DNA of 63,663 nucleotides, filler included, from Octopus bimaculoides (GCF_001194135.2; 6 parts of 6 records of this genome joined end to end with filler, not necessarily neighbours in it), one strand, 5' to 3'. Positions 19,134 through 24,837 are shown, counted from the first letter of the whole stretch. Made by a program: numbers and translations. Notes: generated by a model not told the origin, from the letters alone.

Positions 19134-20097
19134 CTACAAGAGAAAAATATTATTTGCCTGTCAGTGAATAAATGTATACTATTTGTGATCAGATTCATAA
19201 AGAATATGGCAGCCTAATGAGGCTATAAATAATTTATCAAGGAAAGTAATTGGTTATGATTTTTTTAAAGTAAAAATTACTAATAATTAGTTAATAGATT
19301 TTAATTTTTAAAAAAATGTTCTCAAAACTTGTGCAATAATTCAGCAACAATAATATTACTGGTAAAGTTAATGAATAATAGTATATTGCTTGGCTCTTGT
19401 GCGGGTGACACATGAGGTTTCTCGAGCGAGATGAGCGTGGCCGTTGCCAGTACCGCCTGACTGGCCTTCGTGCGGGTGACACGTAAAAGCACCCACTACA
19501 CTCTCTGAGTGGTTGGCGTTAGGAAGGGCATCCAGCTGTAGAAACACTGCCAAATCAGATTGGAGCCTGGTGTAGCCATCTGGTTTCACCAGTTCTCAGT
19601 CAAATCGTCCAACCCATGCTAGCATGGAAAGCGGACGTTAAACGACGACGACGATATAAAATATATATATATATATATATACATGGGGATGCACTTCTAT
19701 GACGATCTCTCACTCTCTCTTTCACATGTGTGTGTGTGCATGCATATGTGTGAAGATGGATAAATAGCTAGACAGACAAGACAGAATAGATAGACAAACA
19801 TAGATAGATAGAGAGACAAACAGATAAGCAATGGATGGATAGACAAACAGATAGATAGGCAAAGAGACAGACAGACAGACAGGCAGATGTGAGTGTAAAT
19901 ATTTTTGTATATACATGCATGGCTGTGTTGTTAACAAGTTTTCTTTCCAAAGAATGTGATTTCAGATTCAGTCCCACTAAGCGGCACATGAGCAAGTGTC
20001 TTCTGTAAAATTTTGCGAGTGGATTTTGTGAATGAAAACCCAAAGAAGCCTGTCGCATGCATGTGTATATAAAAATGTGTGTGTGTGTTGAGCTTAC

Positions 20098-20147
20098 CGT
20101 TCATTAAGTGGCCGTAGTCGAATAACGACTTGAATCTTGTCTGACAT
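20098..20147 (-). CDS. CENPE: Kinesin-7/CENP-E-like, coding exon 1 (MSDKIQVVIRLRPLNER)
   Basis: ATG at 20147 lies 10 nt after the acceptor ttatctttgcag (exon starts 20157). Kinesin beta1 motif IxVxIRxRP. Donor CG|gtaagc, phase 2. Confidence 0.92.
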
Positions 20148-20265
20148 TTTATTCAATCTGCAAAGATAAAACAATATCATCATCATCATCATCATATTCG
20201 TTTAATATCTGCCTTCCATGCTGGCATCGGTGGAACAAATCAAATGAAAAGCAAAATGTCTTATA

Positions 20266-20471
20266 CAGTAATCCCTCGACTATCGCAGGTGTTACATTCC
20301 AAAACCTCCCACAGAAATAATTAAAATCTAAAAAAATATGAATACCTATCAGCCACAGAAACCTGCAGTATACTGAGGAGTCTGTGATATAAATTTGCAT
20401 ATATTAGCCAGAAAAATCTGCAATGTACTGAGTGCACAATAGGTGAACCACAATATGGTGAGGGATCACTG
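20266..20471. mobile_element. pogo/Tigger-like MITE
   Basis: TA-CAGTAATCCCTC...GAGGGATCACTG-TA; second copy at 61590-61812. Confidence 0.8.
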
Positions 20472-20479
20472 TATATCAA

Positions 20480-21029
20480 CCCTTTAGCATTTATACCAGC
20501 CATATCAAGCCCAAATATTCTATCTGTTTTATGTTCAAACTGGTCAGATCTAGCTTCTCATACCTGTCCTACAATGTCATTCTAAAAATATACATTGACA
20601 TCATCAAAATGTCGAAGCTACGAGATGATGCATGGTTAATTCAAGGACAGTTGCGTAAGGAAGTGCAGATCTCTAACTGTGGAGGGAATCTGGAGAAAGA
20701 CATGATCTTTGGATGCTGGGTCTCACAGAGGTGATGACAAATGATCAAGACCTTTGACCATTTGCTGTACCTCAGAAAACTTGTCAAGCCAAGTGAAATC
20801 GTAGTGATGGACAGTGTCAGTGACACATAAAAGGCACTGACTACACTATTGGAGTGGTTGGTATTAGGAAGGGCATCCAGCTGTAGAAACCAAGCCAAAA
20901 TTAGACTGGAGCCTAGTACAGATCTCCAGCTTAGCTGTTTTGGTTAAACCATCTAACCCATGCCAGCATAGAAAACAGACATGAAATTATGATGATGTTA
21001 ATAAGTAAGATAATCTGAATGCTAAAGAG
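20480..21029. mobile_element. piggyBac-like MITE (reverse orientation) interrupted by ~350 bp including a SINE
   Basis: ccctttagcatt at 20480 and aatgctaaagag-TTAA at 21018-21033; SINE at ~20820-20995 inside. Confidence 0.6.
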
Positions 21030-21546
21030 TTAATCATTACAAGCATTGGCACGAGGTCAACATTTTAGTGGTGTGTGTAAGCAGAGTTTTTTAAGTTACT
21101 TCACTAGCACTTAGTTTATTGGACGTTGGAAGGATCCAGCCATTTTCTCTGCCCTCTATTCCTGGGAGGGTTGTTGGGGTATAATCCTAAGGCATCTTTT
21201 TCATAGGGTCCTATCAAAAGCAACTGGCATTACACTTTCCAGCTGGATCACCAAGTGTGACCAACTAAAAGTATGGATATTATCCAACTATATCATTCTT
21301 AGTTTACCCCTCGGTTTCCTGCCAGTTGGATCAGGTTGAATAATCAATCTTGCAATTCTCCCTTGTGGCATTCTAATCACATGTCCATAGTACAAGAGCT
21401 GTGACCTTCCTGATCACCGAGCTTATACACCCTGTCAAGTAACATAACTCCAGAGATCCATTTAAGGACCCCCATTTCAGCCGCTTGTATTTGCGATCGT
21501 ATTGTTTAACACAAGATATTTTTATGAGTTATTATGTGTCATTTAT

Positions 21547-21702
21547 GTAAATAAGATATAATAATGCACTAAGCAATAACACACTATTCAGATAATATTA
21601 TAACAGTTTAACATTCTAAGACATCGTAAATAAGATATAATAATGCACTAAGCAATAACACACTATTCAGATAATATTATAACAGTTTAACATTCTAAGA
21701 CA
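21547..21702. repeat. 79 bp tandem duplication (2 copies)
   Basis: gtaaataagatataataatgcactaagc...attctaagaca starts at 21547 and 21626. Confidence 0.95.
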
Positions 21703-22858
21703 ACAAGTGTAATTAAGTGAAGAATTGCTAAAATGTGGATCGTGGGAGTTTAAGGAGTTGCAACTAAAACTTCTTGTAAATATTGTAGATGTGAACTAAA
21801 GACAAAATTCCAAGACTTAAAACTCTCAACAAACTCTAAGAGAACATACTAATGCAACATCTTTGAAGAACACCTCCCACATCATCATCTTATAATGTGT
21901 CATGCCAACATGAAGGATCGGTTGCAATGAACGAGTGTTGTTACTCTGCTACAAAGAAATGTGGGCCATCTTTCGTTTTCACTCGCAGAAACGAGGTTAT
22001 GCGAGTCATTTAGTTGACTTATACAAGAATAATAATGGTGTTAGCAAAATGTATCTAATCTGAAAATCACCACACAAAATATAAATATAATTCCATAATT
22101 CCTGACTGCAACTATTTTGAAAATGATAGGTTTATTTTGACTTGTTAGACAAGTCGATTTTACTGTAATGAAACTATTTAGCATTTCTATAAAATACTAT
22201 TGTAACTTTTCAATGCCATTTTAATGATCAAATTTCAAAATTTACCGAACTATCTATTGGTTAACTTGATAGCGATAAAATCCACTGTTAATCTTTGGCC
22301 ACAATCGTTATTGTATAAAATGTATTTGATTTCATCTATTTTAATATTTAAAATAGGAAACCGTAATACAATAATTACGTAAAATAGTAATGACTTACGC
22401 AGTTTGAAACTACAAACGTGTCTGACAAAATAGTGTTATTTTCCTACATAATATCTGTACTTCGGTCTACTAGTTACAAAATACATATGTATATATAAAA
22501 TGACTAAATCAAAAGCACTTTACAATTCTGCTTATTATATAGAGATTAACGAGATTTTGTTCACTTTTCATAAGTGCATATTGTCCATCATATATGTGTG
22601 TGTGTGTGTGTATAAGGTTCGAAGATCACCTCTTTCTTTTTTTTTGTTTTTTTTTTTATAAATTCCTAAAATATTCAGATTTTGATGCTATTCAAAAGAA
22701 ATCGGACATTCCCTGAGTAGTGGGAGAGCTGATTTGAAAGTGATGTCAAGTGAAACTATGATAAAACAACAAATATAAACAAGCACCTTAATTACTGTTA
22801 ATATTAGAAGTCCAAAATTTTATTGTACTTACATTTATTTGAGATTATGTTTACTTAC

Positions 22859-22940
22859 ACGATGTAACCAAAATATAGTAATGTCGAACAGAAATCGTTC
22901 GGCTTAAATGTTTTGATAAAACGCAAACAGTTGATAGAAA
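22859..22940 (-). other. Candidate non-coding first exon of the CENP-E-like gene
   Basis: Consensus donor CGT|gtaagt after 22859, just downstream (minus strand) of the CHR/CCAAT core. Alternative gtaagt donors follow 22833 and 22399. The start is a guess. Confidence 0.35.
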
Positions 22941-23050
22941 ATTCAAACTTTAACGAGAACGAATGAGGAACATAATTTAATATTACCACGCTCGTATTTC
23001 ATTGGTTGATGAAAATAAACTACCGATGCTGATTGGTCAATGAATTTAAA
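22925..23050. promoter_or_regulatory. Putative bidirectional core promoter: MYB-like site, CHR-like element, two NF-Y CCAAT boxes
   Basis: Minus strand: GACCAATCAG (ATTGG 23032-23036), AACCAATGA (ATTGG 23001-23005), TTTGAA (22942-22947), CAACTG (22928-22933). TTTAAA palindrome at 23045-23050. CpG is locally retained. Lies between two divergent ATGs. Confidence 0.6.
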
Positions 23051-23540
23051 ACCGGTGTAGATGGAATAAAAGTAACTGTGGATAAATCTGATGTGTTGAT
23101 AAATTTTTGTAACAGAAATTTTATAATCATTTATTTTTCCTTGACATTAATAAAATAAGAAATTATTTTGAAACAAACATAACGAAAACTTTTTTGTAAA
23201 TTGCAATTAAATCTAACTTAATATATAATTGATTCTTCCGTTTCATAGTTGAAAACATAAAAAGAGAAGTCAGTTCCTGCTGGAACTCCGAACGTTATTG
23301 TGCTTTTAATAAATGCCGCATGCAATATTTACCTATCTTCATTTGCTTCTTATTTATATAAGGGCATTACTACAGAATTTGCTTCTTATGCTTAAAACCT
23401 CTTTGTGACATTTCTATCTCGCAATCTCTCTATCTAGGTATAATGAGATAAATACGAAACAGCAGTGCTGAAGAAGTAAAGCAACTCAACCTTTAGTAAA
23501 TACGGTGTTGTATTGTTTACCTGTCATTTAGAATTATAGA

Positions 23541-23678
23541 ATGATCATGTCATCTAACCTACAGCAATTCCAGTTTTGTTCTATATGTCATGCAAGTCAT
23601 ACTGGGGGTAAAAAACATGTCTATTCCAAGAAACATAAATTGTTTCTAGATAAGGCATTGAAACGGTTTGATGAGAAA
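23541..23678 (+). CDS. CENATAC: CENATAC/CCDC84 coding exon 1, zinc finger 1 (MIMSSNLQQFQFCSICHASHTGGKKHVYSKKHKLFLDKALKRFDEK)
   Basis: CxxC...GxxHVYSxKH matches the CCDC84 N-terminus (human CPLC..GRGHVYSRKH). Donor AAA|gtaagt, phase 0. Second in-frame ATG at 23547. Not in the ORF track. Confidence 0.9.
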
Positions 23679-24837
23679 GTAAGTAACTCAATTCGCATTC
23701 ATTACTAATATTGTTGGTTAGCCACAGGCAGAACTCTAAATGGTTAAACAATCGCAAGTCATTCATCTTTGGCCATCATCTCGTCTTTTGGCGATCTTTT
23801 GATTTAAGAACGTTGCAATTATAAATGGGGCATACCTACGCAAATGTATCCCCACTGAAAGTTACGAGGAAATTAAGCCGAAGGGGGCATGATTGTGCAG
23901 ATGTACCTTATAATTTTGTTACTATAGCTCTCTCTTTTACTTTACTACAGATTATTGCTTTTATTTTTATATATGGTGTAACACACACACACACATACAT
24001 ACATACTTACATATATTGTTATGTCAATGAGTTTCTCTAGGACAGCATTTTTCAAACTGGGTCGCGACAAGAAAGGTGATCGCCCATAATAGTACATATT
24101 ATTATGAATTTATTATTCATATACAAAAAAAAAAAAAGATGTTATCGCAGTCGAAATGACTTCAAGGTTTTGTCCAAGGCAATCGAGAGTCTCTCACTCT
24201 CTCCCTCTCTTTTTTTCCTTGAATCCCTAACTATCGAATAAGTTTGGTTGAATTTTAATAACAAGTTGTAATCAACAACTCTGGCAATGGACAAACACAC
24301 ACACACATTCTCAAACAAGTTTGTTCCAAAATTGGTAAACTGAATGACTAGTTGTCAACAGTTATTTTTTACATAACATAATTTTTTATATTTTTTATCA
24401 GTCTTTACTAATTTTGCAGGCAGACATACAGATACTTCACTAGCAGTGAGCACTTTCACTTCTGACAGCTAATAGCATGACAGTGCCGCATAATTTCCTA
24501 TTTCTTCTCAGTCTTTACGGATTTCAAATTTTGGTACAAGGCCAGCAATTTGAGGGGAGGGAACAAGTTGATTAGATGGACTCCAGTTTTCAACTGGTAC
24601 TTATTTCATTGACCCCCAAAGGATGAAAGACAAAGTCAACCTCAGCAAGTTTTGAGTTCAGAATGTAAAGATGGGACCAAATACTGTTAAGCATTTTGCC
24701 CAGCATGCAAACACTAGTGCCAGTTCAATACTTTCAGTGCCTATTAGATATTAGTGTTATGTTGAGATCAGTTCAATCTTCTTTGTCCTTCTTCATTGTT
24801 AAATGAGTTCCTTTTTGTTTTCTTTTTTTCTTTCCAG

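What the first reader, a model, noticed from the sequence alone, without database searches (positions are those of the whole stretch)
20147..23678. CENP-E and CENATAC are head-to-head around a compact NF-Y/CHR/MYB-like core
Seen: the two ATGs (20147 minus, 23541 plus) diverge. Each lies ~10 nt after a splice acceptor, implying non-coding first exons that point back to ~22.9-23.1 kb. That spot has two RRCCAATSR boxes 31 bp apart, TTTGAA, CAACTG and TTTAAA, and nine CpGs in ~140 bp. Established: in mammals, paired CCAAT boxes about three helical turns apart plus a CHR mark G2/M genes under DREAM/MMB-FoxM1 control, CENPE is such a gene, and CENATAC loss causes chromosome mis-segregation through failed AT-AN minor-intron splicing. 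Inference: one bidirectional promoter could couple a kinetochore motor and a minor-spliceosome factor to the cell cycle. I do not know of this linkage in vertebrates. TTTGAA alone is common in AT-rich DNA.
Basis: partly seen in the sequence, partly recalled or inferred. Interest (0 to 1): 0.7.

Follow-up and report, generated by a model that had tools for sequence, protein, structure and literature searches.

The report
Octopus CENP-E/CENATAC divergent promoter island
In octopus, a mitotic kinesin gene (CENP-E type) and the minor-splicing factor gene CENATAC sit back to back around one small CpG-rich promoter island. That island carries a textbook cell-cycle promoter motif set that points at the kinesin only, so this is a neat but fairly ordinary promoter annotation.

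Summary
The window is Octopus bimaculoides. A CENP-E-type kinesin-7 (ATG 20147, minus) and CENATAC (ATG 23541/23547, plus) are head-to-head, 3.4 kb apart. Two RRCCAATSR boxes lie 31 bp apart (22999-23007, 23030-23038), with TTTGAA, CAACTG and TTTAAA nearby.

New support:
- This spot is the peak of the only CpG-undepleted island in 28-40 kb (o/e about 2, against 0.37 overall).
- The box pair is improbable by chance (0.003 per window).
- Both boxes and the TTTGAA are kept in O. vulgaris, which has the same gene pair. That test is weak, because background identity is about 90%.

Corrections:
- The module reads CCAAT, CCAAT, CHR, then GTAAGT donors on the minus strand, so it points at the kinesin.
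- CENATAC probably has a short unspliced leader. Cuttlefish transcripts run straight through the equivalent "acceptor", and no usable upstream donor exists in octopus. Its start would lie about 0.5 kb from the module.
- CAACTG, TTTAAA and the ATG at 23541 are not conserved.
- The linkage is not coleoid-wide. In cuttlefish and abalone the divergent neighbour of CENATAC is GPS2.
- In mammals, CHRs in head-to-head pairs regulate only one gene.

Verdict: a real promoter island of a known kind; co-regulation is unproven. No transcript 5' ends could be obtained for octopus.

The parts
20098..20147 (-). First coding exon of the CENP-E-type kinesin-7 (MSDKIQVVIRLRPLNER). The donor GTAAGC begins at 20097.
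   Evidence: Pfam Kinesin. Best PDB hits are CENP-E. 100% conserved in O. vulgaris.
20148..20173 (-). 10-nt leader (ATTGAATAAA, 20148-20157), preceded by the polypyrimidine tract plus CAG acceptor (intron ends at 20158).
   Evidence: The acceptor is conserved. A 1-nt indel in O. vulgaris breaks the frame of the upstream (ATG)n, so 20147 is the start codon and the region upstream is best read as intron.
20175..21702 (.). Repeat-bearing stretch inside the presumed 2.7-kb 5'UTR intron of the kinesin. Interspersed repeats at 20175-20234, 20478-20651 and 20814-21003; a 77-bp exact tandem duplication at 21547-21702.
   Evidence: Self-BLAST. Low CpG o/e.
22181..23360 (.). CpG-undepleted island, presumably unmethylated in the germ line. 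The peak is at 22801-23080.
   Evidence: All 25 best 200-bp windows by CpG o/e lie here. It is also the top region in the 39.5-kb chromosome locus L004. The homologous O. vulgaris stretch has o/e 1.65-1.84.
22827..22858 (-). Two consensus splice donors on the kinesin strand (AAT|GTAAGT with G at 22832; CGT|GTAAGT with G at 22858). Candidate 3' ends of a non-coding kinesin exon 1.
   Evidence: the best minus-strand donors next to the module (a third, GAG|GTGATC at 22629, scores 3.22 but lies about 310 nt downstream of the CHR). They score like the known donors of this gene. Kept as GTAAGT and GTATGT in O. vulgaris. No ATG lies between the CHR and the donors (read from the sequence).
22942..22947 (-). 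Canonical CHR, TTTGAA, in sense orientation for the kinesin, 56 bp downstream of the proximal CCAAT box.
   Evidence: Conserved in O. vulgaris. A weak signal on its own: 58 TTTGAA in the window.
22928..22933 (-). MYB-like CAACTG.
   Evidence: Present, but it reads CACTGT in O. vulgaris, so it is not conserved and probably not functional.
22999..23007 (-). Proximal NF-Y box, AACCAATGA.
   Evidence: Identical in O. vulgaris.
23030..23038 (-). Distal NF-Y box, GACCAATCA (core CCAATCAG), 31 bp from the proximal box.
   Evidence: Identical, with the same spacing, in O. vulgaris. Pair probability 0.003 per window.
23045..23050 (+). TTTAAA, a CHR variant.
   Evidence: Present. Reads TTTGCA in O. vulgaris, so it is not conserved.
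23218..23332 (.). 115-bp block identical between the two Octopus species, the longest identical run in the spacer. It contains TCAGTT (23270-23275), a GTTCC-TGCT-GGAAC palindrome and CGGAAG. Candidate CENATAC upstream promoter element.
   Evidence: No Rfam match. No significant RNA fold on either strand. Function unassigned.
23429..23540 (+). Probable CENATAC core promoter and short unspliced leader. Includes a 56-bp identical run (23429-23484), TATAAT (23439-23444) and GATAAAT (23447-23453). Inferred start at about 23470-23515.
   Evidence: The stretch 23511-23540 aligns to the cuttlefish leader, which RNA-seq contigs show to be unspliced and 32-75 nt long. No ATG between 23446 and 23540 (read from the sequence).
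23541..23678 (+). CENATAC coding exon 1 (first zinc-finger motif). The conserved start codon is at 23547. The donor GTAAGT begins at 23679.
   Evidence: The ATG at 23541 is absent in O. vulgaris.

Best explanation
The 3.4-kb spacer between the divergent start codons of the Octopus bimaculoides CENP-E-type kinesin-7 gene and CENATAC contains one CpG-undepleted promoter island of about 1.1 kb (22.2-23.35 kb).

The peak of the island carries a late-cell-cycle promoter module of the classical kind. Two NF-Y CCAAT boxes lie 31 bp apart, followed 56 bp later by a canonical CHR (TTTGAA). All three are on the minus strand, in the order CCAAT, CCAAT, CHR.

Inferred working:
- NF-Y supplies activation. 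A MuvB complex (LIN54 on the CHR) restricts firing to proliferating, G2/M cells.
- The kinesin transcript starts at about 22.90-22.95 kb.
- A non-coding exon of about 50-110 nt is spliced from the GTAAGT at 22858 or 22832, across a 2.7-kb intron that holds interspersed repeats, to the acceptor 10 nt before the ATG at 20147.
- CENATAC most likely starts from its own core promoter about 0.45-0.6 kb to the right (about 23.47-23.52 kb). It would have a short unspliced leader, and the 115-bp invariant block would be its upstream element.

So the two genes share an island and fit the '<1 kb' definition of a bidirectional pair, but not one compact symmetric core.

Shown: gene identities, orientation, motifs, CpG island, conservation in O. 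vulgaris, and the absence of the linkage elsewhere. Inferred: the start sites, the splicing of the kinesin leader, factor binding and cell-cycle control.
For: - Gene identities.
- Same head-to-head pair in O. vulgaris.
- CpG o/e peak of 2.0-2.2 against 0.37 for the window.
- Non-random NF-Y pair plus CHR.
- Both boxes, their spacing and the CHR are identical in O. vulgaris.
- Kinesin acceptor conserved, and the upstream (ATG)n frame not conserved.
- Interspersed repeats in the first ~0.9 kb upstream of the kinesin ATG.
- The best two minus-strand donors next to the module lie 84 and 110 nt downstream of the CHR.
- Literature: CENPE is a DREAM-bound CHR gene. CHRs sit on or near the TSS. CCAAT boxes lie upstream of the CHR, about 33 bp apart (PMC4176359; PMC3287175).
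- CENATAC side: cuttlefish RNA-seq contigs show an unspliced 32-75 nt leader running through the homologous TTTAG. The octopus sequence aligns to that leader. No usable plus-strand donor lies upstream. A 56-bp invariant run with TATA-like motifs lies at 23429-23484.
Against: - No octopus transcript 5' end, junction read, accessibility or methylation data could be reached, so every TSS is inferred.
- The O. vulgaris comparison has little power. Background identity is 90-94%, and I estimate the chance that all 24 motif bases survive at about 0.1.
- The cluster itself (88-93% identity, 80% at 22861-22950, with a 7-bp indel) is not above background.
- TTTGAA is frequent.
- The cuttlefish leader is evidence from a lineage with a different upstream neighbour, and the octopus-cuttlefish alignment of the leader is only moderate.
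- CHR, MuvB or FOXM1-type control has not been shown in any mollusc, to my knowledge.
Confidence: 0.55

Rival explanations
1. One compact NF-Y/CHR core at 22.9-23.1 kb fires in both directions. Both genes have non-coding first exons starting there, and both are cell-cycle coupled.
For: - Divergent genes around one CpG island.
- AG-terminated pyrimidine stretches 9-10 nt before both ATGs.
- A 46-bp invariant run at 23063-23108, just right of the boxes.
- NF-Y boxes can work in either orientation (general knowledge).
Against: - No plus-strand donor scoring above 0.4 between 22950 and 23530.
- Cuttlefish transcripts read through the homologous 'acceptor'.
- The CHR variant on the CENATAC side (TTTAAA) is not conserved.
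- In mammals, a CHR between head-to-head genes regulated only one of them (PMC4176359).
Confidence: 0.2
2. The motif cluster is a by-product of an ordinary housekeeping CpG island or of chance. The island drives constitutive transcription, and the TTTGAA is not a functional CHR.
For: - TTTGAA occurs 58 times in the window.
- The cluster is not more conserved than its flanks.
- NF-Y boxes are common in many non-cell-cycle promoters (PMC4176359).
Against: - The spacing, order and strand match the cyclin B2 / CENPE-type architecture.
- The pair arises by chance in 0.003 of simulated windows.
- The gene served is an orthologue of a known CHR gene.
Confidence: 0.2
3. The kinesin promoter lies elsewhere: in the well-conserved 21.7-22.1 kb stretch, or in the repeat-bearing stretch next to its ATG. 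On this reading the 22.9-23.1 kb module serves CENATAC alone as a distal element.
For: - 21700-21900 is 95-97% identical to O. vulgaris, above background.
- A second, smaller CpG patch lies at 22200-22500.
Against: - CpG o/e is low at 20.2-22.1 kb.
- Only weak minus-strand donors lie there (scores 0.8-1.9).
- Six upstream ATGs would sit in an unspliced leader.
- The cuttlefish CENATAC upstream region lacks a paired CCAAT module, so the module is not an ancestral CENATAC feature.
Confidence: 0.05

Closest known systems
Mammalian late-cell-cycle CHR/NF-Y promoters (cyclin B2, CDK1, CDC25C, UBE2C, KIF23, CENPE), bound by DREAM and MMB/FOXM1-MuvB
   Same: Two CCAAT boxes about three helical turns apart (31 bp here, about 33 bp in cyclin B2). 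They lie upstream of a canonical TTTGAA, in a TATA-less CpG-type promoter, and serve the orthologue of a listed CHR gene (PMC3287175, PMC4176359).
   Different: - The AT-rich (about 30% G+C) island is defined only by lack of CpG depletion.
- No CDE or E2F site.
- The TSS is not mapped.
- Factor binding and cell-cycle expression are untested, and no mollusc precedent is known to me.
- Conservation is shown only between two congeners.
Bidirectional (head-to-head) promoters with TSSs less than 1 kb apart (Adachi and Lieber 2002, as cited in PMC4176359)
   Same: Divergent genes with a single CpG island between them. The inferred TSS distance is about 0.5-0.6 kb.
   Different: - The ATGs are 3.4 kb apart because of a presumed 2.7-kb 5'UTR intron.
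- The regulatory module is asymmetric.
- Mammalian CHR examples (METTL15, DCAF16, IFT80 and others) show that only one partner is cell-cycle regulated.
GPS2-CENATAC head-to-head arrangement in other molluscs
   Same: CENATAC is the plus-strand member of a divergent pair, with a CpG-undepleted patch at its 5' end in cuttlefish.
   Different: The partner is GPS2 in Haliotis rufescens and Acanthosepion pharaonis. It is not a kinesin there. Octopus has exchanged the partner.

Membership tests
Kinesin-7 / CENP-E | N-terminal kinesin motor domain | tested here: met
   Pfam PF00225, 1.4e-49. Exons mapped with canonical GT-AG borders.
Kinesin-7 / CENP-E | Motor closer to CENP-E than to other kinesin families | tested here: met
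   The top PDB hits are 1t5c and 6m4i (CENP-E) at 171-172 bits, against 146 bits for kinesin-2. The top named database hits are CENP-E, kinesin-7 or KIN-7. No phylogenetic tree was made.
Kinesin-7 / CENP-E | Very long coiled-coil tail with kinetochore- and microtubule-binding regions | not tested
   Only the annotated product lengths were seen: 2479 aa in O. bimaculoides and 1726 aa in O. vulgaris. The tail lies outside the window.
CENATAC / CCDC84 | CCDC84 family domain, including the N-terminal zinc-finger motifs | tested here: met
   Pfam PF14968, 1.4e-18, above the cut-off. The four exons in the window are identical to XP_014776882.1, 'centrosomal AT-AC splicing factor'. 120 homologues found across animals.
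CENATAC / CCDC84 | Acts in the minor spliceosome on AT-AN introns | not testable with these tools
   Known for the human protein only (PMC8280824).
CHR/NF-Y late-cell-cycle promoter | Canonical CHR (TTTGAA, TTTAAA or TTCGAA) on or close to the TSS | tested here: inconclusive
   TTTGAA is present at 22942-22947 and conserved. The TSS is not mapped, and TTTGAA is common.
CHR/NF-Y late-cell-cycle promoter | CCAAT boxes upstream of the CHR, spaced about 31-33 bp | tested here: met
   Boxes at 23030 and 22999, 31 bp apart, then the CHR 56 bp downstream on the same strand. Chance 0.003 per window.
CHR/NF-Y late-cell-cycle promoter | Phylogenetic conservation of the CHR and the CCAAT boxes | tested here: inconclusive
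   All three are identical in O. vulgaris. At about 91% background identity this is expected in about 10% of cases. No more distant octopod could be reached.
CHR/NF-Y late-cell-cycle promoter | Bound by DREAM/MMB (LIN54), with G2/M peak expression | not testable with these tools
   No expression or binding data for octopus are available here.
Bidirectional promoter | Divergent orientation with no gene in between | tested here: met
   No Rfam family in the spacer.
Bidirectional promoter | TSSs less than 1 kb apart | not testable with these tools
   Inferred to be about 0.5-0.6 kb from the motifs, the donors and the cuttlefish leader homology. No octopus 5'-end data.
Bidirectional promoter | Co-expression of the two genes | not testable with these tools
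   No data. The mammalian precedent argues against it for CHR promoters.

The most novel reading that the evidence does not exclude
An octopod-specific rearrangement replaced GPS2 with CENP-E as the divergent neighbour of CENATAC. The shared unmethylated island now puts CENATAC under the same NF-Y/CHR cell-cycle gate as the congression kinesin. Expression of a minor-spliceosome factor needed for chromosome congression would then be coupled to mitosis by gene order.
Probability: 0.12. Interest if true: 0.5.

Novelty: new member of a known kind. Interest (0 to 1): 0.3.

Why it matters
If confirmed, this would be a clear invertebrate (lophotrochozoan) example of the NF-Y double-box plus CHR architecture on a CENP-E orthologue. 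That would support deep conservation of MuvB/CHR control of mitotic genes.

It also illustrates how the reshuffled octopus genome created a new head-to-head pair of two genes whose loss gives the same phenotype in human cells: failed chromosome congression. That is a pleasing coincidence, but gene order alone does not show coupling. The mammalian evidence says that CHR promoters act in one direction. The gene pair itself is already visible in public annotations of two Octopus genomes.

Tried and rejected
- Octopus transcripts. A look-up of the window's unspliced exon-1 ORF found nothing. P0121 and P0241 exist only on genome contigs, and their 90% cluster holds no Logan member. So no 5' ends were obtained for octopus.
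- Word-indexed homologue search with the 96-aa CENATAC fragment found nothing. The full HMMER scan was needed.
- Lottia as a synteny test. The annotated kinesin model starts at the third coding exon, so 'no CENATAC within 10 kb' is weak. I do not lean on it.
- DNA of the Pecten and Haliotis loci (L005, L006) never appeared in the script folder. Only their gene tables were used.
- ncRNA in the spacer or in the 115-bp invariant block: no Rfam hit near threshold. Fold z-scores were +0.40 and -0.22.
- U12-type intron in the kinesin, a possible functional link to CENATAC. The single GTATCCTT (11235-11242, minus) lies in a repeat and not next to coding sequence. All mapped introns are GT-AG.
- In-frame N-terminal extension of the kinesin through the (ATG)6 run: the frame is broken in O. 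vulgaris.
- TATATAAG at 23355-23362 as the CENATAC TATA box: it lies in a ~40-bp stretch of O. bimaculoides, flanked by a direct repeat of TTTGCTTCTTAT, that has no counterpart in O. vulgaris.
- Similarity between the octopus and cuttlefish promoters: only low-complexity matches.
- Literature on a CENPE-CENATAC link, or on CCDC84 as a DREAM target: nothing relevant.
Full report
**What the window is.** The CENATAC exons in the window are letter-for-letter those of Octopus bimaculoides XP_014776882.1, 'centrosomal AT-AC splicing factor'. The whole 3,394-bp spacer is identical to chromosome CM046620.1 of GCA_001194135.2 (locus L004). The window is AT-rich, carries assembly gaps and many interspersed repeats, and is strongly CpG-depleted (o/e 0.37).

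**The two genes.**
- On the minus strand, ATG 20147 opens MSDKIQVVIRLRPLNER. It is followed by GT-AG-bounded exons down to about 2.7 kb that together encode a kinesin motor (Pfam Kinesin 1.4e-49).
- Among solved structures the human CENP-E motor is the best match: 172 bits, against 146 for kinesin-2. The best database hits are named CENP-E, kinesin-7 or KIN-7.
- The annotated product is 2,479 aa in O. bimaculoides, which fits CENP-E's long coiled coil.
- On the plus strand, 23541-23678 encodes the N-terminal zinc-finger part of CENATAC/CCDC84 (Pfam 1.4e-18). Further exons lie at 24838-25007, about 26.1-26.2 kb and about 27.66-27.75 kb.
- The ATG at 23541 is not conserved. O. vulgaris has TTA there, and both O. 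vulgaris and cuttlefish start at the equivalent of 23547.

**The motifs.**
- RRCCAATSR at 22999-23007 and 23030-23038, both on the minus strand and 31 bp apart.
- TTTGAA on the minus strand at 22942-22947, CAACTG on the minus strand at 22928-22933, and TTTAAA at 23045-23050.
- Nine CpGs in 22885-23025.
- In 3,000 first-order Markov windows a same-strand pair 28-36 bp apart arose in 0.3%, and with a TTTGAA downstream in none. With the observed site density (9 against 4.25 expected) I estimate about 0.02 for the pair.
- TTTGAA alone is worth little: there are 58 in the window.

**Independent support: a CpG island.** All 25 best 200-bp windows by CpG o/e lie in 22181-23360. The peak (o/e 2.0-2.2) is at 22801-23080, exactly on the motif cluster. 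The same holds in the 39.5-kb chromosome locus. The homologous O. vulgaris stretch has o/e 1.65-1.84, among the highest in 60 kb. In a genome that methylates gene bodies, such a patch is the expected footprint of a promoter that is unmethylated in the germ line. That last step is inference.

**Related species.**
- O. vulgaris (L002) has the same head-to-head pair, with the ATGs 3,861 bp apart. Non-coding identity is 90-94%.
- Both CCAAT boxes, their spacing and the TTTGAA are identical there. CAACTG and TTTAAA are not.
- With about 9% divergence the survival of 24 motif bases has a chance of about 0.1, so this is a weak test.
- The cluster as a whole is at background identity (88-93%). It falls to 80% at 22861-22950, where there is a 7-bp indel.
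- The stand-out element is elsewhere: a 115-bp perfectly identical run at 23218-23332, plus a 56-bp run at 23429-23484. Neither matches an RNA family or folds significantly.

**The linkage is not old.**
- In the cuttlefish Acanthosepion pharaonis and the abalone Haliotis rufescens, the divergent upstream neighbour of CENATAC is GPS2 (Pfam G_path_suppress). No kinesin exon lies in the cuttlefish spacer.
- In the scallop the neighbour has no kinesin domain. In the hard clam nothing is annotated within 10 kb.
- The Lottia test is weak because the kinesin model there is partial.
- Parsimony makes GPS2-CENATAC the older arrangement and CENP-E-CENATAC an octopod novelty.
- The cuttlefish CENATAC upstream region has no paired CCAAT module. 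The module is therefore not an ancestral CENATAC feature.

**Which way does the module point?** On the minus strand the order is CCAAT (23038), CCAAT (23007), CHR (22947), then two consensus donors. These are CGT|GTAAGT at 22858 and AAT|GTAAGT at 22832, the best minus-strand donors next to the module (a third, GAG|GTGATC at 22629, scores 3.22 but lies about 310 nt further on). Both are kept in O. vulgaris.

This is the published architecture of late-cell-cycle promoters:
- CCAAT boxes about 33 bp apart (PMC3287175).
- The boxes lie upstream of a CHR that sits on or close to the TSS, and CENPE is itself a listed DREAM-bound CHR gene (PMC4176359).

For the kinesin, a spliced non-coding first exon is also the economical reading:
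- The acceptor 10 nt before the ATG is conserved.
- The (ATG)6 run just upstream would otherwise load the leader with start codons, and its frame is broken in O. vulgaris.
- The first ~0.9 kb upstream of the ATG holds interspersed repeats (20175-21003), and the stretch up to 22.1 kb has low CpG o/e.

- No plus-strand donor scoring above 0.4 exists between 22950 and 23530, whereas known donors of these genes score -0.1 to 5.6.
- Three independent cuttlefish RNA-seq contigs encoding CENATAC are colinear with the cuttlefish genome straight through the homologous 'TTTAG' 7 nt before the ATG. One contig has sequencing adapter abutting position -33 and another begins at -32. The leader there is therefore short and unspliced.
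- Octopus 23511-23540 aligns to that leader.
- The stretch 23446-23540 contains no ATG, and it is preceded by TATAAT and GATAAAT inside the 56-bp invariant run.
- I therefore place the CENATAC start at about 23.47-23.52 kb, roughly 0.45-0.6 kb from the NF-Y/CHR module. That is too far for the usual -60 to -100 position of NF-Y boxes (general knowledge).

**Bearing on the coupling idea.** The two genes very probably share an unmethylated island and qualify as a '<1 kb' bidirectional pair, but the cell-cycle module is directional. [quoted passage not shown] They attribute direction to the placement of the CCAAT boxes upstream of the CHR (PMC4176359). CENATAC loss does cause congression failure through minor-intron retention (PMC8280824), which is also the CENP-E loss phenotype (general knowledge). 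That functional resonance is real, but nothing here shows co-regulation. No paper linking the two genes was found.

**Limits.** No octopus transcript ends, junctions, methylation or accessibility data were reachable. No octopod more distant than O. vulgaris could be fetched. All start sites, factor binding and cell-cycle control are inferences from sequence architecture and from mammalian precedent.

**Verdict.** This is a new, probably octopod-specific, instance of known kinds of thing: a CpG-island divergent promoter region, with an NF-Y/CHR module serving a CENP-E orthologue. Interest is modest. It would rise if expression data showed that CENATAC is also gated to G2/M.

Noticed in passing
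window 23218-23332: A 115-bp run with no difference between O. bimaculoides and O. vulgaris, better conserved than the adjacent coding exon. It contains TCAGTT, a GTTCC-TGCT-GGAAC palindrome and CGGAAG. No RNA family match and no significant fold. Function unknown; possibly a CENATAC upstream promoter element.
   Followed up: partly
window 23541-23549: The first ATG, used by the RefSeq model (MIMSS...), is not conserved. O. vulgaris and cuttlefish start at the equivalent of the second ATG (23547).
   Followed up: yes
window 20174-20194: A (CAT)n/(ATG)6 microsatellite lies directly upstream of the kinesin acceptor. It is in frame with the start codon in O. bimaculoides but frame-shifted, with a stop, in O. 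vulgaris.
   Followed up: yes
window 21547-21702: An exact 77-bp tandem duplication (two copies, 2 bp apart). O. vulgaris appears to have a single copy, so the duplication is recent.
   Followed up: partly
window 23351-23392: A stretch of about 40 bp carrying TATATAAG and flanked by a direct repeat of TTTGCTTCTTAT. It is present in O. bimaculoides and absent in O. vulgaris. Just downstream, O. vulgaris has three copies of TCTATCTAGGTATA where O. bimaculoides has one.
   Followed up: partly
L002 8328-8750 (O. vulgaris), opposite window 22117-22380: O. vulgaris carries an unrelated insert with long inverted arms (GCTCGGATTTTTTGCGTGGAATCAAGTACCCTGACCTC ... and its reverse complement) around a G-run, which looks like a MITE. 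The O. bimaculoides sequence at this place does not align.
   Followed up: no
window 20814-21003, and copies at 3972-4148, 4642-4766, 5753-5942, 11926-12070, 19476-19568: A short interspersed repeat family with at least six copies in the 28-kb window (75-84% identity). Further families occur at 20478-20651 and 27151-27322; the latter has many copies in the O. vulgaris locus.
   Followed up: no
L002 26700-27900 (O. vulgaris, inside a CENATAC intron): A second CpG-undepleted patch (o/e 1.7-2.1) with no counterpart examined in O. bimaculoides. It could be a young insert or another promoter.
   Followed up: no
L007 1-1453 and L006 1-6084: GPS2 (G_path_suppress) is the head-to-head neighbour of CENATAC in both a cuttlefish and an abalone. 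This suggests an old mollusc microsynteny that octopus has broken.
   Followed up: partly
L009 1-23: This Logan RNA-seq contig begins with 23 nt of Illumina adapter (TCAGACGTGTGCTCTTCCGATCT) fused to the cuttlefish CENATAC leader at -33. It is useful as a 5'-end marker, but it is also an assembly artefact.
   Followed up: yes
window 6250-6750, 8260-8400, 26900-27150: Runs of N (assembly gaps) inside kinesin introns and a CENATAC intron. Two kinesin exons (about residues 20-49 and 160-188 of the motor) were not found in the window.
   Followed up: no
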